A stretch of 64,000 nucleotides of DNA from Lytechinus pictus (GCF_037042905.1 NC_087247.1:38378001-38442000), one strand, 5' to 3'; counted from the first letter of the stretch, positions 5,426 through 17,600 are shown. Translations and numbers: made by a program. Notes: a model not told the origin generated them from the letters alone.

Positions 5426-5780
5426 AATAGCAGTAGCAGCGACAGTAGTAGTAGTAGTAGAACAGNNNNNNNNNNNNNNNNNNNNNNNNNNNNNNNNNNN
5501 NNNNNNNNNNNNNNNNNNNNNNNNNNNNNNNNNNNNNNNNNNNNNNNNNNNNNNNNNNNNNNNNNNNNNNNNNNNNNNNNNNNNNNNNNNNNNNNNNNNN
5601 NNNNNNNNNNNNNNNNNNNNNNNNNNNNNNNNNNNNNNNNNNNNNNNNNNNNNNNNNNNNNNNNNNNNNNNNNNNNNNNNNNNNNNNNNNNNNNNNNNNN
5701 NNNAGTAGCAGCAGTAGTAGTAGAGGTAGAAGTATAAGTAGTAGTAGAAGAAGAAGTAGTAGTAGTACTAATAGTAGTAA

Positions 5781-7849: not shown

Positions 7850-8517
7850 CTGAAAAACACTAAATGATGTCTCATTTGTACATGTTTGTAACTGTCAAAT
7901 TACTCCTTTATATAGGAAACATGTATATCCTATAGTGTCAATTTATTCAATGTGTATTAAAAGAGCAGTACAGAGTAATATTTTTGCTCATGGTGCCAAT
8001 AAAAAAGGCGATCCCCGGACTTTCATGCGTCTATATTAGACCACTCGACCGCCGTGCCTCAACACACTCACACACAAACACGCACACCCTAGCTAGTACA
8101 CACCCACTCATTGTACAGGGGCGGCGCCGCGATAATTTGAAAGGGGGACAAGGAGACATAAACATGCTAAATGTCACATCATTATTTTTCTTTGTTAACA
8201 AAAGCAGGGGCAATTTAACGTTATGCAATAATTCATACCTCTCATTTTTATACTCCTCTTCCTTCTTTCTTCTCGGTTTTTTTCTTTGTTCTCTACTATT
8301 TCTCTTACTATTCTAAAATTGCCCCTGTCCCACCCCTGGACGTCACTCTGCATGCCTATAAACATCCTCTCACAAACTGTACTTCCCACCCTTTACTAAT
8401 ATACACCTCCTCTCTCATCATCATTCACGCACACATTATGTACTCTCTCTAACACACCCACAATACCCACATCACTCACCCACACACGCAATCATGAATT
8501 ACTACGTGCGATCATAC

Positions 8518-8694
8518 CTCTTGAAAGCAGACCGGCGATGTGCGTCATTTCGCCTTCACTATGTATGGTAGCAAGTTTAGCATCCAGCAAGTCGCAACTG
8601 GCTCGAGCCTTAGTCCATGAGACAAAGTCTCGCTGTACCAAGTAGCAATGAGAGCCGTAGCCTTCCCAATCCGTTGGACACAAAGATCCGGGAG
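8518..8694 (-). CDS. CTLD6, first-half exon
   Basis: [34 protein letters not shown]; no WIGL or WND exons found downstream. Confidence 0.85.
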
Positions 8695-11600
8695 CTGCAA
8701 TGTATATATTAAGACCCATGGAATACAAATGTCGTTCCCTGGATAATTTGAGGGTTTAGTTATCAAACAAGTTATTAAAAAATAAAATCAGACATGCAAA
8801 AACACGTAATTTCAGCTTCGATATATATATATATGCATCGGAAAGTTTGTGGCATCCTCAGAGCGAAAAAAAATACGCTGTAGAGTAACACAGAATTAAT
8901 GTGTAAATTATCTATTAATTATCCATTCTATGGTGAAGAAATAAGTCTCAAACCATACTATGCGGATAATAAGATACCTGAAGAAAACAACTCAAACTTA
9001 ATCATTTAAAAATAGGGCTTCCCCGGATAGACACGACACGGACAATTAAAAAGCAGCATATAATTACCTAGGGTTGTTGGTGCGACAGAAGAGCCAATGA
9101 CATTCTTGCCTGTGTACAAATGAAAAATCATACATTTTTTAAAAATGAAACCAAGAAAGCAGCATGGTTAAAATTACAATATTTACTTCTATTTGTAGGT
9201 TTGGTGATAGATTTTGGAAATGAGGCATTGGTCGCAATAAGCCTGTATTTCATTGTTTCCATGTTTACCAAGGTAAGGAGAGAACAGCAACATTAGGAGG
9301 GTGTGTGTGACAGGATAAATCATATTAACGTAAAATGCATGAGAGTGTGTGCGTGTGGTGTGTGTGTGAGTGGATGAATGTTTGCGTAAAATAGTATACA
9401 ATACAATTCATCGAGGATATTAGTAAAAATTTATCACACGAAGTACCCTTGGAACAGTTCTAAAACTATTACGAAGGTACCAGTAGTGAGTAACTATTTT
9501 CAAGTCCGACCAAAATGATGTATATTAAGTTTTCTATGAAGATAATGAAGTCGATCCTTGTTAATTGATAATCAATCCTCGTTTCAAAACCATGACCGGT
9601 CACTAGTAACCGTCATCAGCAAATTTGCGTGTATGCTAAAATAAATGACTCGTCATGTGACATATTTCTTCTAATCATTTAATCATATTAGTGTGGGTAT
9701 GAAGTAGGTCAAAGTCGAATCGACTTCATTCTATTTGCTCAATGATTTATATCGCATTTGACAGTTTGATAAAATATTATAATGGATATTCAAAATCTTA
9801 CTTCTTTTCTTGCAGATGTAAGGAAACGTAAGATCACACTTTTCGTCGGACCACATTCCGTTTCCTCTTGCCATATACACACATTCTTCAATCCCCTGAA
9901 GGTTATCTGGTTGACCTAGTTTAAAAAAATGACAACAGTAAACATAATTTAATAAAATAAATTTCATATTTTAGTTTGCAACTCGTCGTTATCAATGCAA
10001 CGTTGTAAACACGATAGTACAATGAAAGTATTTCCAACAAACTCTTTCTTACCTTCTAGTCATATTTGTGTAATCATGGTAATAGGCCTGTTACTCATCG
10101 TTTTTACTTCTTGAAACTATTACTTTCTTTATATAGATTATTATAAATAACGTGTAAAAATAAATTTGTCATTATATCAGACAATAACTGATTCATATTT
10201 CCCAATTTTCCCAATTAAAAAAATACTTTATAAAAAATCGAATTCACAATGATAGAGAAAACGGATCCTGTAATTACACCGAATATTTTCAAGGTAAGAA
10301 TATGAAACATGGGCCAATAAGATTTAGACCAAATGAAGACGGTTCTTCTAGAAATGGTATTATGTGATTGTAGACCAATCATAAACCTGTTTCCCCCAAT
10401 GTTTTGTAAAAATGGCAATCATTTATTTAGTGACGATGAAGGTACCTGGTTGCCAATTTAAGTAAGAGAAAGGACTTGCATCTGTCCATTCCCAGCCTGC
10501 CTCCTGAAATCGATCATTTGCTCCTATCCAGAAACCTTCTACTGGTGATAATGAGATCATTCCTATATTAAAAAAGATATTGAGTCATTTATGGATTACT
10601 TCATAGAATATCAGATTATTGATATACATTATTTAATTTGATACACTTGTACTGATTATTGATGATAAGGGTAAAATATAACAATGATGATAAAGTCACG
10701 ATGATATCGCGAAATAAAACAACGACGATGATAACAATTATGATAATATTAGAAATGTGGCCACAGCACAAGATAATCGTTAGACTAACCGACTATAAGA
10801 TTCGACTCCGCCTCGGATAAGATACTGAGGAGATTGGCATCTTCACCCTCACACGCTTGTTGTGCTTCATCGAAACTTAGCGTTGAATCCTGTTCTATCT
10901 TATAACACCATTCCTCAGATGGGTCAGCTCTCCATCCCTCGCCCCCACAAGCTTCTGCATCGTTTCAGGGAAAAATAAATATGAGAGTTAAATGCGTTTA
11001 GGTGATACGGTGGAAACGATTTAAAGTAAAATGGTATTTGAGTGCAACTATTGAATAAATTGATCAATGATTTGCTCCTAACGCATATATTATTCCACAG
11101 AATTGAGGAGGGCAATTATCAAACTGTGTGGATCCGAAATGGGTGTAAGAAAATTCTGTTTGCGGGGAAAAGGATTACATACGAAATATTGTCCTCTTTT
11201 GACAAACATTAATAAGGGCTACGGTTGAAAGAAAATGGCCGAGGGATGATGGGATGTCGGATATTTAATGAATAAAAAACAAATGACAAGCGATGGTAGT
11301 TATTGTTACTTTGGCTGCGTATAATTTGCGTACAGTGACAATTAAAAATCATTCGGGGACCACTTGTTTTAACATTAATGTATGCATCAATTTGCAAAGC
11401 ACAAGTCTATATTTTATGCTTCTCTCCACCTAGAATAAGTGGTAAGCTGGAATGTTCCCCTGAGAGTGGAGAATGTACATACATTTTATGAGGGGAAGCA
11501 CATTTCGAATTCAGTAACAGGGAACGTAATAATAATGCACTAACCATATTCATAAATAACAATATCACTATATTTTCATATGGATATCGATTGATATGCA

Positions 11601-14600
11601 TATATTCGAATGCTTATTAAACAACATAATTCATGAGTGGTGTATTATCTTCTGTTGGATCCCAGGAGATGGTTTACATCATAAGAAACATGTCTTACCT
11701 TGTACATTACACTGAGGGATGTCACATAACTCTCTCATGTACCCCTGTTCATTGTGAGCCGCTTTATACATACAGAATGGAGCATCCGCGATGAATACAG
11801 AAGGATTACGGCAGTAATTCTCATCCAAACCTTCCAGTATAAGATATAGAAGATCACAACATTAATTCAATGCTGCCAAGCACCAGCTTTTAGTCAGGAT
11901 TTGACGCCCTTGTGGCGTTTAGGTTAACATGCGTATATAGTCTATCAGTCAGACTGGAATCGCATATCACATTATCATTACCAAAAGAGGTTATATAACT
12001 CCACCCATTGTTAAAAAAAAAAAAATCATTATATTACATTTTATTTTCCCGACAATGCCCAGCCAGAACATGCAAGACAGATGTTCTGTGATGAAATAGC
12101 GATATTGGCTGAACCCCAGAGAGCACTCTGGCAAGCATTGCCAAATACTTTTAACCGAGTCTGGTGGCTTTAAATTGTAATTGACTCACCAAGAAATCGT
12201 AAGACAGAGAATGGTTGATATCTGAAATTGACATGAAATTATGAACTGAAACGGAGTCTTCATAAATGCCGCTAAGACACTTTCTCTATCATGGATCGAG
12301 CTTGTTACTTTGATGCAACAGAGCCGAGGTGTTGGACTTTATGAACAGAGATCACTGGGAACGTAAATCATGAAGTGAAAAAATCATTTCTTTTTATCAG
12401 CTTTTGAAAAGGTGTCCTAAAAGTGAGCATTTCAGCGATAATCTACAAACTTTCCAGCTCATATGCAGATAAAGATAATGGTTGTTGTACTCTTTAATAC
12501 AGATATTTAGTTCAAAAAGCTAAACCCAGATCGACGATGATAACAGGACAATAACGATTACAATCAGTCTCAAATAATGTGTATACTCGTATAAGTTTTA
12601 GCATGGAAATGGTCAATCATAAAAAAAAATCGTACAGGATAATGAGGATTTCGAGATTGATAATACTTTAACTTGTATTTCCTCTCTCACCTGCATTCGG
12701 ATAATTATCAGGAATCCAATAAGTGTCCTTCCATTCCACACAGATATGACCAGATGCTGTGGTGCGAGCTGGACCGCGGTAAGTAGTGCCTCGGACCCTC
12801 GGATCGTAGCATCCTACATCTTCAGCTGTTTGGTACAGAATCAGCGACATGAATAAAATGGAATGAATCAGCATTTTTAAATTGCTTTGACAAATATTTC
12901 AAGCAATAAAAACTACATAGAGCATGTAGGTGTAAATCTCTGGAAATCTGCCGCACTAGTTCATGTTCTTTTAATATAATTTCGTCAGATTCAAACTCTG
13001 TAATCACCTATTCCTAAATATCATAACCAATCAACACACCAATTAAATACGATCATTCGTTTCTTGAACCAATTAAGGAATAATACTAGCTTATGTATCA
13101 ACTTTTTCCATTTATTGATCTGTATAAACAATTTTGCTCATGTTTTTGTAGTCCATAAAAAGTGTCATGCTGTATTTTGCTCAAGATTACTTTCTATACA
13201 CCGCATTGAATTTTAATTATACATTACATTCAGATCTTTAGATGATGACACATTTGTGATGACATTCCGGCATTCTCGAATATGGTTAATCAGGCTTAGC
13301 ATTCAATGTTTTTTGTATTCCAGCACGAATGGAAGTATAATTTTGATGATAGACTTCTGATATCCCACAATCACATTACGTCCAGTCAGACGAAGCACAC
13401 TTACAACTGCATTCTATGACTAAATATTGTGACCAATCAGGACGAAGCATACTTACAACTGCATTCTAGCACTAAATATTGTGACCAATCAGGACGAAGC
13501 ATACTTACAGCTGCATTCTAGCACTAAATAGTGTGACCAATCAGGACTAAGCATACCTGTATTGTAGTACCGACATTGTGACCAATACGGAGAAATCTAC
13601 AACTGTATGCTGGCACCAGACATTGTGACCAATCAGGACGAAGCATACTTACAATTGCAGTCTGGCGCAAAATAGCGTGTTCAATCAGGAAGAGGCATAC
13701 ACCTGTACTTACTGCGTTTTAGTACCAAACACTGTGACCAATCAGGACGAAGTATACTCACGATTGCATTCTGGTACTGAACAATATGACCAGTCTGTTT
13801 GGTTGTGTATCGGATCCCAAAAGTAACACCATGGACCCATCGCTCCATTCGGATTTCGGCAATAATTCTCCTCCAGCCCTAAGAAGTGGTAAAAAATAAA
13901 AACCTCTGTACAGAATCCTCCATCTCATTTCTAAACAACTAGCTTCATATTCTGATTTTAGTATTTGTACATTATTCGTCTTGGCCAAGATGCCAGTCGA
14001 TTAAGTGAAAATTAATTACTCGATATGATTTGTCTTTGCAGATTTCGATTAAATTATTCGTAGAGTATATAGGGCCTTAATCATGCAAGTGTCACATGTG
14101 AAATATTTTTATTTTGTTAATGTCTTGTTCGGGGATCTTTTAAGTAGTTGTCCATTTAAATAATATCGAGAATAGGTGCCCATTCTATTGCTCTCTGTCA
14201 GTTTGTATTCTTCAAACAAAGTTGTGAACAATTTGATAACGGTAAAAAAAAATTGGTAGACCGACGCTGTTTAACATTTCTACTAGATAAACTTCTATTC
14301 TTTCTTTGATATATTTTTATTTCAATTTCACTATAGGCCTTTATCATGTGAATCTTGGGGATCTACCACCGTCAAAGATTACCAAAAATGGTGCTTCTGT
14401 TTTCCTGCTCACCATATGTTTGGTTTCTCTCATAATAGTCTTGTTCTGGGTCGTAGCCTAATTCCACATCTTTACTGTTCTTAGCGCTCAAGAGACAACG
14501 AGATCGGTCACTCCCGCCACTCGCCGTGTGGTAATTAAACGATTTGCAGAAGAAATCAGCTCGATGAAGACACTCATGGGCACACTCAGAGAGGCTGATA

Positions 14601-17600
14601 TCGCTGATACTTGGTGCCACTGGAAGGATGGATTTGAGCGGCTGCATCGTGAATTCGCTCAATGGCACTAAGACAAAGAAAAAAGGGTATTTTGCTATCC
14701 ATACCTTGGAAGAGGGTATATAGTTATTACAAACCTTATTTGTCCCTCTACAACCCTCAAAATGACCAAGATATGTAATAGGTAAGGCTCTGTACAGCTA
14801 AAGTGCATACACAGTTGAAAATTTCTCTGGGTTGAATTCTTAGTTGAACAATATATCATAGGCTCGAATTGATTTTAACTTGAGCTTTTTTGACAAACCC
14901 CCTACTAAATTCAAAGGTAAATCGTTCCACTCTAATATCACTCTTAGTGATATCCAGATTATACAATTAAAACTAAAAGAACTACAACATTAACTGGAAC
15001 GTGTGCACTTTGATTGTGTTCAGACATGACGGAATTGGAGATATCTTCATTGTAATGTAATAAAAAATTATCACCATTGGTAATACATTGTCAAATATTG
15101 CATACTTTATAATGATATTTTGGATGTGTAACAATTATAATAATCGATACTTTCGATTTCCGCTCAAAGATGGGTCTCCCAAAGTGTATATCATTCATGT
15201 GCAAAGAGAATGATTCTGGCAAATCAATATGCTTACCTGGGTAAAATTCATCGATGAAGTTGACCCAGTCAGAGCAGGTCCGTCCTAAAGAAATGTAATT
15301 TGCATGTCCGCGATACGACATCCCTTTCCCGACATAGCATCCAACTTCAACTGGGTAAGAGTAATATAATTTATTTGTCTTTAATTGCTATTCATTCATT
15401 ATATGTTAGCAACTGTGTGATTTATCATTGATCATTTCAATTAGCATTGTTTCATGATGCTTTTAATTATTTGAGTGAATGGGCTTTATGGCTTACTATA
15501 TTTTGATTCATTCTTTCAATAAGATCGACACTACATTGACATATAGTAATTTACAAAAAATATATAATCAATACTTACTGGTGCAATGTGGGACAAGACA
15601 TGGTTCCTGTACAAGGCCTTGGTTATCGTCTCTTACGTAACACCATGGCTCGTCGTCCTGGCTTGGATTGCGACAGTAATTATGATCCAATCCTGTCATT
15701 ATTATATGAAATTTGAATAGTTGTTGATATCATACTGACCTAATAGAGACATTTTAAGGAGAGTGCCATTAAACGGATATGTATCTTACTGATCAAATAA
15801 TGTGAGCGTGAAGCGCGAAAGTTTTTGATATTCAGACCTAAAAAGGGACATTATAAGTAAATGTTTGTTATCATGATACGTACCTGTCTTGCTTTAACAA
15901 ACAATACGAGCGCGGACATTTTAAGGACTATACTTTAGGAATCAATCAAGAGTATACATATATCTCACCATAGTCATCTAATGCGAGTGTCAAGCGATTG
16001 CTGATTTTGTTAGAATTACATCTAATCACACTTGTAGTCATTGTAATCATGATTAACATACGCATCTCACTAATCAAATATTGCGAGCGCGAAGCGCGAG
16101 CTTAAAATTTAGGAAATTCAGACCTGAAGAGGGGCATTTTAAGGCTTGTTTGCAGGAAATCACGAATATCATACGTATTTCACTAATCAAATGATGCAAG
16201 CGCTATGCGCGAGCTAAAATTTTTGTTGACTCCAAAACCATGAAAACAGGGATATTTTAAAAACTATTTTTAAGGAATTCATTAAGAGTATACATATCTC
16301 ACCATAGTCATCTAATGCGAGTGCCAAGAGCTTACTGATTTTGTTAGATTTGCATCTATAAACACAAGTCATGAAGCACTTTTTGTAGTCATTGTAATCA
16401 TGGTTATCATACGCATCTCAATAATCAAATTTTGCGAGCGCGAGCTGAAAATTTAAGAAATTTAGACCTGAAGAGGGGAATTCTAAGGCTTTGATACTGA
16501 TATTCTTCGTCACCAAAGGGGCGAGTACAGGTCTACTCTAGACTGACTCTAAAAGCAGACATACCAGCATTAGGATACGTGGTAGGGTTATATGGCCGAC
16601 TTGTCGCTTCTTCCCACTTTACGCACGTCTGTCCATTCTCTCCTTCATTCGCTGATCCTCTATAGTTGGCACCGTTTCCCTCATAGCAACCAGTAGCTGT
16701 GTGGGGGTAAGCGAAATCGACTCGTGCATGATTATTGTATCAATAATACTGATGTATCATGTATAATCTTCGATACACTGTAATGCAACAGTGAGAATAA
16801 TGACGTTGCTAATTAGGCCCAAGTTCTCGTTTTCAGATTTCTTCCTCCCAGATTCAATAAATAATTAAATAGGAGAAATATGTATCAACAAACAACACAT
16901 ATAATGGTTATGAATTTCTCCGAAGATGGAGTAAAAATCTAAAGCAGTTTTGGCAGTTTTACAGAAGTGCTATAAACAATATGTTCAGCATTCAAACGCC
17001 TAACAGCACAAACACTGAAACAATCAACAATTTTAGGACTTATGCATGCACTTCGATAATTGTTAACTGGATAATATTATTACAAAAATAAAAGAAAATA
17101 AAAATAAATCTTATATCGGCTATTTATCATACCACCTCATTTACACCACTTTCCCCACCTGTATACGATAATTCCTTTCTGCATTTACCATGATTTAAAA
17201 AAACAACTGCTTTCACAACCATCCTGTTTAAAAATACACATATCTGTAATGAACAAAATACTTACTATTGCACTTGGGGATTCCACAATAGGAGTATGCG
17301 TACCCTTCAGCTTTCTTGTTATAGTAACACCATGGACCATTTCCGGATCCAGCTGGGTTTCGACAGTAATTACCCTCCAGACCTATTCATTTAATTATTG
17401 AATTTCAGAATACTTTGATCTGAATGATAAATATGATCATTGTATTTATTATTGCTTTTTGTAAAGACGTTTGATTAAAATAACGTAAAAAATAATAATT
17501 TGTCAATGATTATTCAGATGGGTTTACATTTAGGGTAATGATATAGGATAACGATGTAGATACTTGTATATTTTCTTATAAGTCACCAGGCACCACGGTC

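What the first reader, a model, noticed from the sequence alone, without database searches (positions are those of the whole stretch)
13382..13795. A minisatellite copied from the kringle-4b exon/intron junction forms an array of extra splice donors behind an in-frame stop
Seen: on the minus strand the exon end plus donor reads GACTGGTCATATTGTTCAGTACCAGAATGCAATC|gtgagtatacttcgtcct (52 nt). The intron continues with about 7 diverged copies (gattggtcacaatatttagtgctagaatgcagttGTAAGTatgcttcgtcct). Five carry a consensus GTAAGT (plus-strand acttac at 13399, 13451, 13503, 13647, 13707). Reading past the true donor gives ..[12 protein letters not shown] (13742-13744). Inference: use of any repeat donor would give an NMD substrate or a protein ending right after kringle 4, without K5 and the QPD lectin domain. 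Copy number could then tune expression or isoform ratio. It lies next to the unusual nested PAN exon.
Basis: partly seen in the sequence, partly recalled or inferred. Interest (0 to 1): 0.72.

Follow-up and report, generated by a model that had tools for sequence, protein, structure and literature searches.

The report
Intron minisatellite repeating a splice donor
The intron after a kringle exon of a sea-urchin (Lytechinus pictus) mannose-receptor-like gene starts with eight tandem copies of the exon end plus its splice donor. This is a known kind of repeat (as in human F7 and IFI6), and in the one RNA data set only the first, true donor is seen in use, though this intron is also the only one left partly unspliced.

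Summary
A 52-nt unit (34 nt of exon end plus 18 nt of intron) is repeated about 8 times at 13382-13795 on the minus strand. It is unique in the 812-Mb genome. Six good pseudo-donors all lie behind an in-frame TGA.

The functional reading is not supported. Spliced contigs of one RNA-derived run join only the true donor (13762) to acceptor 12825. Contig depths leave roughly 3% or less for any other donor.

The structure belongs to a described class: minisatellites whose first monomer spans an exon/intron boundary (human F7, IFI6, CBS, LMNB2, PDGFA; PMC1557585). In that class the most upstream donor normally wins. The scan has already found the same kind twice elsewhere on this chromosome (VPS13, R3H genes). 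I re-checked both arrays.

New facts:
- This is the only one of six assessable introns left unspliced, at about a quarter of the depth. That yields the predicted stop by retention, not by alternative donors.
- S. purpuratus has its own array at the same junction: 83 bp, 8 copies on one scaffold and 4 on another. Diadema has none.
- Intron positions +9 to +28 (with CTGATTGG) are conserved between the two urchins far better than in six neighbouring introns.

Most likely this is a near-neutral, long-lived, exon-anchored minisatellite.

The parts
13762..13878 (-). Kringle-4 second-half exon (117 nt, phase 1 at both ends)
   Evidence: Spliced contig joints 13877/8->14412/3 and 12825->13762. Pfam Kringle E 2e-10. 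Frame.
13754..13764 (-). Authentic donor ATC|GTGAGTAT (GT at 13761-13760)
   Evidence: It is the only donor seen joined to 12825. U1 match 7/11. Scores 5.2 bits on a 23-site echinoid donor matrix, in the lower quartile.
13744..13795 (-). Repeat unit 1: last 34 nt of the exon plus first 18 nt of the intron
   Evidence: Unit alignment
13742..13744 (-). In-frame TGA reached by read-through. It lies inside the conserved CTGATTGG motif.
   Evidence: Translation. The same stop occurs at the same relative place in S. purpuratus.
13687..13743 (-). Unit 2 (57 nt, rearranged). Pseudo-donor GCA|GTAAGT with GT at 13712.
   Evidence: 6.9 bits
13635..13686 (-). Unit 3. Pseudo-donor ATT|GTAAGTAT with GT at 13652.
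   Evidence: 8.6 bits
13588..13634 (-). Unit 4 (47 nt). Its donor has decayed to GTAGAT (GT at 13600).
   Evidence: -0.5 bits
13543..13587 (-). Unit 5 (45 nt, deletion). New site CAG|GTATGC with GT at 13556.
   Evidence: 7.6 bits
13388..13542 (-). Units 6-8, the young distal end (88-96% identical). Pseudo-donors with GT at 13508, 13456 and 13404.
   Evidence: 8.4-8.6 bits
13380..13387 (-). GACTGGAC just after the last unit. It is a short direct repeat of the unit start (GACTGGTC in the exon) and a likely seed for slippage.
   Evidence: Sequence; the role is inferred
12826..13761 (-). The whole K4b/K5a intron (936 nt), partly retained in RNA
   Evidence: Contigs 12796-13448 (depth 10.7) and 13625-13791 (depth 10.9) run from the intron into both flanking exons. 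Five other introns have zero depth. The non-repeat part is unique in the genome.
12691..12825 (-). Kringle-5 first-half exon and the shared acceptor (AG at 12827-12826)
   Evidence: Joints; exon table
13431..13744 (+). Five GACCAATCA motifs (an inverted CCAAT or Y-box type, CTGATTGG on the gene strand) at 13431, 13483, 13535, 13627 and 13736, one per unit boundary
   Evidence: Pattern search. This is the most conserved block of the unit and is conserved in S. purpuratus.

Best explanation
This is a junction-spanning intronic minisatellite, most likely a near-neutral by-product of DNA slippage or unequal exchange.

Origin (inferred): a short direct repeat, GAYTGGTCA in the exon and again about 52 nt later in the intron, let the exon end plus donor duplicate in tandem. 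The first copy is held intact by selection on the kringle and on the donor. Downstream copies decay (units 2-5) and are re-amplified from time to time (units 6-8).

Splicing: the spliceosome uses the first, authentic donor. The six pseudo-donors score as well or better as motifs but stay essentially silent, as in human F7, LMNB2 and PDGFA.

History: the locus is old and dynamic. S. purpuratus carries decayed junction copies plus a young 83-bp array at the same junction, with 8 versus 4 copies on two haplotype-level scaffolds.

Shown here: the array, its origin from the junction, use of the true donor, partial retention of this intron, and the array and copy-number difference in S. purpuratus.

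Inferred: neutrality, the slippage seed, and that the arrays of the two species descend from one ancestral array.
For: Array and register. Unique in the genome.

RNA: the true donor is joined to 12825 at depth 30.6 and no pseudo-donor joint is listed. 30.6 spliced plus 10.7 unspliced comes close to the 42.6 depth of the next exon.

Motif strength: pseudo-donors score 6.9-8.6 bits against 5.2 for the true donor, and still go unused. Borensztajn et al. 2006 showed the same behaviour for F7 and list further cases (PMC1557585).

No sign that the donors are maintained: pairwise identity is 0.61-0.66 in the intron-derived (donor) part and 0.66-0.70 in the exon-derived part. One donor is decayed and one deleted.

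No special RNA structure (z 0.24).

Same kind of array elsewhere on this chromosome: 136 bp x 13.7 with CAG|GTGAGT in every unit, and 178 bp x 3.4.

Comparative: Diadema has the same exon end and intron position with no array. S. purpuratus has an 83-bp array, 8.0 and 4.0 copies on scaffolds that are 94-98% identical, plus decayed copies beyond it (local score 27 against a maximum of 23 in 300 shuffles).
Against: The array-bearing intron is the only one of six assessable introns that stays unspliced, at about 26% of the depth. This would fit an effect of the array on splicing efficiency.

Intron positions +9 to +28 are 14-15/20 identical between L. pictus and S. purpuratus, against 5-10/20 in six other introns of the gene. 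Something next to the donor therefore seems constrained, and both species' arrays multiply it.

Arrays at the same junction in two urchin families, with different unit lengths, are not expected from rare random events unless the locus is a hot spot or the array is kept.

The RNA evidence is one run of assembled contigs. Contigs drop rare variants, and five weaker joints were not shown.
Confidence: 0.65

Rival explanations
1. The array acts on splicing efficiency rather than on donor choice. Several U1-binding pseudo-donors just inside the intron slow or block its removal, making it a detained or retained intron. A set fraction of transcripts then carries the TGA and is degraded or gives a protein ending after kringle 4. 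Copy number would set that fraction.
For: Only this intron is retained, at about a quarter of the depth. Six pseudo-donors score at or above the true, weak donor. Copy number varies 8 versus 4 in S. purpuratus. Decoy splice sites are known to promote intron retention in human erythroblast genes (PMC6097662, PMC7373989; titles and abstracts seen).
Against: It rests on one intron in one run, so it is a correlation without a control. The weak true donor (ATC|GT, forced by the codons and also present in Diadema) could explain slow splicing by itself. No effect on retention is stated in what I read of the paper that lists the human junction minisatellites (abstract, introduction, discussion). The pseudo-donors show no extra conservation.
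Confidence: 0.2
2. One reading: the pseudo-donors are really used in some tissue, stage or immune state. They would give decay substrates or a truncated K1-K4 protein, with copy number tuning the ratio.
For: All pseudo-donors lie behind the stop and score well. In IFI6 and CBS the first two pseudo-sites are used (PMC1557585). Decay of such RNAs would hide them from steady-state data.
Against: No such joint is listed, and the depths leave about 3% at most. In F7, pseudo-sites much stronger than the true site still do not compete.
Confidence: 0.07
3. What matters is the conserved element next to the donor (CTGATTGG, read on the other strand as CCAATCAG, a Y-box or CCAAT-box type site), not the donors. 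The arrays multiply a transcription-factor site or an intronic splicing enhancer, making a copy-number-variable cis-regulatory block.
For: The element is 11/11 identical between L. pictus and one S. purpuratus scaffold, and +9 to +28 is conserved well above six control introns. It is the best conserved block of the L. pictus unit. It occurs 5 times in the L. pictus array and 7 times in the S. purpuratus one.
Against: The motif was picked after the fact. It is also what an old copy of the ancestral exon (Asp-Trp-Ser codons) would look like. It is missing in Diadema. It is altered in some S. purpuratus units, one of which reads CCAATCGG. No binding or expression data exist.
Confidence: 0.08

Closest known systems
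Human F7 intron 7 minisatellite (37 bp, 5-9 copies; Borensztajn et al. 2006, PMC1557585)
   Same: The first monomer spans the exon/intron boundary and the donor is repeated in every unit. Only the most upstream donor is used, although the pseudo-sites are functional motifs. Copy number is polymorphic, which is seen here only in the S. purpuratus orthologue.
   Different: F7 repeats only 4 nt of exon and its units are identical. The L. pictus unit carries 34 nt of exon, its units are old and diverged (62-96%), and several pseudo-donors score higher than the true one. In F7 some pseudo-sites would keep the frame; here all lie behind a stop.
Human IFI6 (6-16) intron 2 and CBS intron 13 minisatellites (Turri et al. 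1995; Lievers et al. 2001; both as cited in PMC1557585)
   Same: Junction-spanning arrays that provide repeated donors.
   Different: In those genes the first two pseudo-sites are used constitutively. Here no pseudo-site use was detected.
Human LMNB2 (100 bp x 10-15) and PDGFA (81 bp x 16-18) junction repeats (as cited in PMC1557585)
   Same: Longer units that repeat the exon/intron junction; only the authentic donor is used.
   Different: They are human genes, and PMC1557585 mentions no comparison across species for them. Here the same junction carries arrays in two urchin families.
Decoy-exon model of intron retention (Parra et al. 2018, PMC6097662; 2020, PMC7373989)
   Same: Unproductive splice sites lie inside an intron that is retained in part of the transcripts.
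   Different: Decoy exons have both a 3' and a 5' site and are usually conserved single elements in long introns. Here there is a tandem array of 5' sites only, and no link to the retention has been shown.
Other junction arrays in the same L. pictus chromosome (earlier scan findings s1-294483 VPS13, s1-320037 R3H gene)
   Same: Tandem copies of an exon end plus its donor at the start of the intron. I re-saw 136 bp x 13.7 with CAG|GTGAGT in each unit, and 178 bp x 3.4.
   Different: Those arrays are younger (93-97% matches) and have longer units. No orthologue or RNA data were examined for them here.

Membership tests
Junction-spanning intronic minisatellite with repeated 5' pseudo-splice sites (F7 / IFI6 / CBS / LMNB2 / PDGFA type) | Head-to-tail array of a unit of tens of bases inside an intron | tested here: met
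   Period 52, 7.7 copies; eight units in register
Junction-spanning intronic minisatellite with repeated 5' pseudo-splice sites (F7 / IFI6 / CBS / LMNB2 / PDGFA type) | The first monomer spans the exon/intron boundary | tested here: met
   Unit 1 is 34 nt of exon plus 18 nt of intron. The boundary is fixed by the spliced contig joint 12825->13762.
Junction-spanning intronic minisatellite with repeated 5' pseudo-splice sites (F7 / IFI6 / CBS / LMNB2 / PDGFA type) | The donor motif is repeated in the following units | tested here: met
   Six of seven intronic units carry a site scoring 6.9-8.6 bits, against 5.2 for the true donor
Junction-spanning intronic minisatellite with repeated 5' pseudo-splice sites (F7 / IFI6 / CBS / LMNB2 / PDGFA type) | The most upstream (authentic) donor is the one used, or pseudo-site use is limited to the first one or two | tested here: met
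   Only 13762->12825 is listed, and the depth balance leaves about 3%. This is one contig-level run, so rare use is not excluded.
Junction-spanning intronic minisatellite with repeated 5' pseudo-splice sites (F7 / IFI6 / CBS / LMNB2 / PDGFA type) | Copy number varies between individuals (VNTR) | tested here: inconclusive
   It could not be tested in L. pictus: there is one assembly and the contigs break inside the array. In the S. purpuratus orthologue, 8.0 versus 4.0 copies sit on two scaffolds that are 94-98% identical.
Decoy-exon / decoy-splice-site intron retention | The host intron is retained in a sizeable share of transcripts | tested here: met
   The intron is covered at depth 10.7-10.9 and is contiguous with both exons. 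Five other introns have zero depth.
Decoy-exon / decoy-splice-site intron retention | The decoy has paired 3' and 5' sites (a cryptic exon) seen at low level in RNA | tested here: not met
   No joint into or out of the array is listed. The units hold only weak AG and pyrimidine contexts, judged by eye.
Decoy-exon / decoy-splice-site intron retention | Removing or blocking the decoy lowers retention | not testable with these tools
   This needs a minigene, antisense or genome-edit experiment.

The most novel reading that the evidence does not exclude
The array could be an evolutionarily maintained, copy-number-variable control block at the kringle-4/kringle-5 boundary of an echinoid mannose-receptor-like gene. 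By multiplying a conserved element next to the donor (CTGATTGG) together with U1-binding pseudo-donors, it would set how often this one intron is retained. That in turn would set the ratio of full-length receptor to a degraded or kringle-4-terminated form. It would have been kept and renewed in at least two sea-urchin families.
Probability: 0.12. Interest if true: 0.6.

Novelty: new member of a known kind. Interest (0 to 1): 0.35.

Why it matters
As it stands, this is an invertebrate example of a class so far described mainly in a handful of human genes. It behaves the same way: the first donor is used even though stronger copies follow. That supports the generality of the rule that the most upstream site wins.

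Two things make it a little more than a curiosity. First, the same junction carries arrays in L. pictus and S. purpuratus, with a copy-number difference in the latter and an unusually conserved 20-nt stretch beside the donor. Second, the array-bearing intron is selectively retained.

L. pictus can be bred and edited in the laboratory, so the locus could serve as a natural test bed. It could show whether tandem pseudo-donors influence splicing efficiency in vivo, which the human cases have left open.

Tried and rejected
1. L. variegatus orthologue. The locus fetched through XP_041460872.1 (L002) stops about 3 kb short of the intron. The 2270-aa neighbour protein could not be retrieved by three protein searches, and its genome is not in the genome search. 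Whether the sister species shares the array is unknown.

2. Exact-ORF look-up of a window ORF across the junction found nothing on record.

3. Logan contigs L003-L005 come from an unnamed urchin; the K4b exon of L004 is identical to that of S. purpuratus scaffold L012. They end inside or one base after the K4b exon, so they show no intron. In hindsight the break fits the S. purpuratus array.

4. A profile of the L. pictus intronic units gave only weak hits in the S. purpuratus post-array region (E 0.26-0.39). A local-alignment test against shuffles was clearer.

5. Selection on the pseudo-donors: no excess conservation. Rejected.

6. RNA structure masking the pseudo-donors: z 0.24. Rejected.

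7. A dispersed repeat or transposon as the origin: the array, the unit and the rest of the intron are single-copy. Rejected.

8. Genomic DNA contamination as the source of intron coverage: five other introns have zero depth. Rejected.

9. A Pfam check of the exon in front of the 136-bp array found no family.

10. Turri et al. 1995 (PMC306954) is not held in the library. It is cited only through PMC1557585.

Full report
**What is there.** On the minus strand, the window holds part of a multi-domain gene of the painted sea urchin Lytechinus pictus. NCBI annotates it as 'macrophage mannose receptor 1-like' (XP_063953055.1, 1295 aa; XP_054749960.1, 984 aa). The protein has C-type lectin domains, five kringles each split into two exons, a PAN domain encoded by one exon inside kringle 4, and further lectin domains including one with a QPD motif.

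Spliced contigs of one public run fix seven exons between 11699 and 17400. All are phase 1 and multiples of three. The exon of interest is 13762-13878, the second half of kringle 4 (Pfam Kringle, E 2e-10). Its intron runs 13761-12826, and the next exon (first half of kringle 5) starts at 12825.

- Tandem Repeats Finder reports a 52-nt period, 7.7 copies and 73% matches at 13382-13772.
- In register, unit 1 is the last 34 nt of the exon plus the first 18 nt of the intron, and seven intronic units follow.
- Unit 1 is 64-79% identical to the others. Units 2-5 are old and carry indels. Units 6-8 at the distal end are 88-96% identical, so they are recent duplicates.
- Read-through of the true donor gives ...ECNREYTSS and TGA at 13744-13742. 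Every pseudo-donor therefore lies behind a stop.
- The array, its consensus unit and the rest of the intron are single-copy in the 812-Mb assembly, so this is not a dispersed repeat.
- The direction of copying is clear. The exon part encodes the conserved kringle end (Cys-x-Val-Pro-x-Cys). Diadema antillarum has the same exon end, the same intron position and no repeat.
- GACTGGAC directly after the last unit repeats the unit start. Such a short direct repeat 52 nt apart is a plausible seed for slippage (inference).

**Strength of the donors.** The true donor ATC|GTGAGTAT matches the U1 5' end at 7 of 11 positions. The pseudo-donors match at 7-8 of 11, with similar duplex energies.

A small matrix built from 23 other echinoid donors gives the true donor 5.2 bits, in the lower quartile. 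Those 23 donors were either RNA-verified here or mapped from the annotated L. pictus and Diadema proteins. The six pseudo-donors score 6.9-8.6 bits, at or above the median. The matrix is small, so these values are rough. The ranking agrees with the U1 count: as motifs, the copies are at least as good as the original.

**What the RNA shows.** The look-up of sequencing runs returned one run (X1). Its kind is not on record, but its contigs are spliced at GT..AG across seven introns, so it derives from RNA. Three results matter.

1. The joint 12825->13762 is present at depth 30.6. No joint from any pseudo-donor is listed. Five weaker joints were not shown. Most of the odd joints that are listed sit in a high-copy element at 15700-16500.
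2. A 653-nt contig (12796-13448, depth 10.7) and a 167-nt contig (13625-13791, depth 10.9) run from the intron into both flanking exons by the expected 30-nt overlap. Unspliced RNA of this intron therefore exists.
3. After subtracting the exon parts of the depth bins, the K5a/K5b, PAN/K4b, K4a/PAN and K3b/K4a introns and the one at 16838-17225 have zero depth. A sixth other intron is masked by a repeat. This rules out genomic DNA contamination and shows that retention is specific to the array-bearing intron, at about 10.7/(10.7+30.6) = 26% of the depth.

The next exon's contig has depth 42.6, close to 30.6 + 10.7. That leaves roughly 3% at most for any other route into acceptor 12825.

All of this is contig-level evidence from one run. 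Contig depths are means, and contigs drop rare variants. The result is 'the true donor dominates and no pseudo-donor use is detected', not 'never used'.

**No sign that the pseudo-donors are maintained.** Mean pairwise identity of the donor-bearing, intron-derived part of the unit is 0.61-0.66. For the exon-derived part it is 0.66-0.70. One donor has decayed to GTAGAT and one is deleted. The pre-mRNA of the array folds no better than shuffles (z 0.24).

**It is a known kind.** Borensztajn et al. [quoted passage not shown]
- Human F7 intron 7: 37 bp, 5-9 copies, only the most upstream donor used.
- IFI6/6-16 intron 2: 25 pseudo-sites, the first two used.
- CBS intron 13: 15-20 repeats, two pseudo-sites used, and copy number linked to enzyme activity in a cited study.
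- LMNB2 (100 bp) and PDGFA (81 bp): only the authentic donor used.

[quoted passage not shown] The L. pictus array meets each structural criterion of this class and shows the same splicing outcome.

The scan itself has noted two more such arrays on the same chromosome. I re-saw both.
- The first has a period of 136 bp and 13.7 copies at 97% matches, with CAG|GTGAGT at the end of an exon-like open frame in every unit. Pfam did not name that exon.
- The second has a period of 178 bp and 3.4 copies.

Recurrence in one genome argues for a mutational, not a designed, origin.

**What is new: the same junction in another urchin family.** The S. purpuratus orthologue (XP_030855792.1; locus L011) has the K4b exon at about 10522-10638 and K5a from 11899. 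Between them lies an 83-bp array, 8.0 copies, 92% matches.

Its unit is the last 56 nt of the exon plus the first 27 nt of the intron. The authentic donor is followed by seven copies, six with the identical GTAAGT context. Read-through again hits TGA after nine codons.

A second S. purpuratus scaffold (L012, XP_030853998.1) is colinear and 94-98% identical over about 5 kb. It is either the other haplotype or a very recent duplicate. It has only 4.0 copies, so copy number is variable there.

Beyond the young 83-bp array lie decayed junction copies. The best local alignment to the 52-nt junction segment scores 27, against a maximum of 23 in 300 shuffles and 13-18 in four other introns. The profile search was weaker.

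Junction duplication at this exon has therefore happened more than once and probably predates the split of the two families. Diadema lacks it. I could not reach the L. variegatus intron.

**An unexpectedly conserved stretch.** Between L. pictus and S. purpuratus the bulk of the intron does not align. Yet positions +9 to +28 after the donor are 14-15/20 identical without gaps, including CTGATTGGT. The same positions in six other introns of the gene score 5-10/20. By my own estimate the binomial chance at the background rate is about 1e-4, or about 1e-3 after allowing for seven introns.

On the other strand the motif reads CCAATCAG, a CCAAT-box or Y-box type site (from my own knowledge, not tested). 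It holds the in-frame TGA, is the best conserved block of the L. pictus unit, and is multiplied in both species' arrays.

It also looks like an old copy of the ancestral exon codons Asp-Trp-Ser. S. purpuratus has since changed Trp to Ser in the exon but not in the intron copies. I cannot say whether it is a constrained splicing or transcription element or a lucky fossil.

**Most likely mechanism.** This is a long-lived, exon-anchored minisatellite. Slippage or unequal exchange between the exon end and exon-like sequence just inside the intron creates copies of the junction. Selection keeps only the first copy. The rest decay and are re-expanded from time to time. The first donor is chosen, as in the human cases. 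I put this at about 0.65.

The main rival (about 0.2) is that the pseudo-donor array lowers the efficiency of removal of this intron, which is the only one retained. Copy number would then modulate output. The weak, codon-constrained true donor is an equally good explanation of the retention, and nothing here separates the two.

Actual use of the pseudo-donors in other conditions (about 0.07) and a function of the conserved CTGATTGG element (about 0.08) remain open.

**Verdict.** This is a new member of a known kind. Interest is moderate to low (0.35), raised above a plain neutral repeat by three things: the array at the same junction in S. purpuratus with variable copy number, the conserved element beside the donor, and the selective retention. 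All three can be tested in a tractable organism.

Noticed in passing
window 14413-14667 (-); L006 761-1009; L011 9429-9668: The PAN exon (255 nt, phase 1 at both ends) sits between the two half-exons of kringle 4 and is included in the 2098-nt spliced contig. The same order (K4a, PAN, K4b) is present in Diadema antillarum and S. purpuratus, so the PAN-inside-kringle arrangement is old in echinoids. This is the subject of another first-stage note (s1-294471).
   Followed up: partly
window 15350 (-): The RNA contig has G where the reference has T at the first base of the K4a exon, changing Ile to Ser in ...HCT-I/S-EVGC. Four further differences lie in the retained intron (12915, 13129, 13349, 13694). 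These are probably ordinary polymorphisms between the RNA donor and the reference animal.
   Followed up: no
window 15700-16500: The intron between the K3a and K3b exons holds a high-copy, highly expressed repeat. Contig depths run from hundreds to about 5000, with many odd joints and loose ends. It is presumably a transposable element transcribed from many loci.
   Followed up: no
L011 12459-15622 versus L012 20984-20989: The two S. purpuratus scaffolds differ by a 3.1-kb insertion in the K5a/K5b intron. It contains a 123/243-bp tandem array (L011 13469-15303).
   Followed up: no
L006 (Diadema antillarum JBFRCO010000135.1), 154-1009: The annotated Diadema gene model starts at L006 position 1001. 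The K4a exon and nearly all of the PAN exon of the same gene lie upstream of that start, so the model appears to be cut at its 5' end.
   Followed up: no
window 8492-8728 (-) and below: The L. pictus model XP_063953055.1 ends by reading into an intron (...GMIARSNS). The S. purpuratus and L. variegatus models continue with many more lectin domains (2149 and 2270 aa), so the L. pictus model is probably truncated at its 3' end. An N gap lies at about 5470-5700.
   Followed up: no
L009 3217-5084 (G000:C3:14871216-14873083) and L010 4244-4856 (G000:C3:32599243-32599855): Two further exon-end-plus-donor arrays lie on the same chromosome: 136 bp x 13.7 at 97% matches, and 178 bp x 3.4 at 93%. Such arrays may be fairly common in this genome, and a genome-wide count against annotated exon ends would be easy.
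   Followed up: partly
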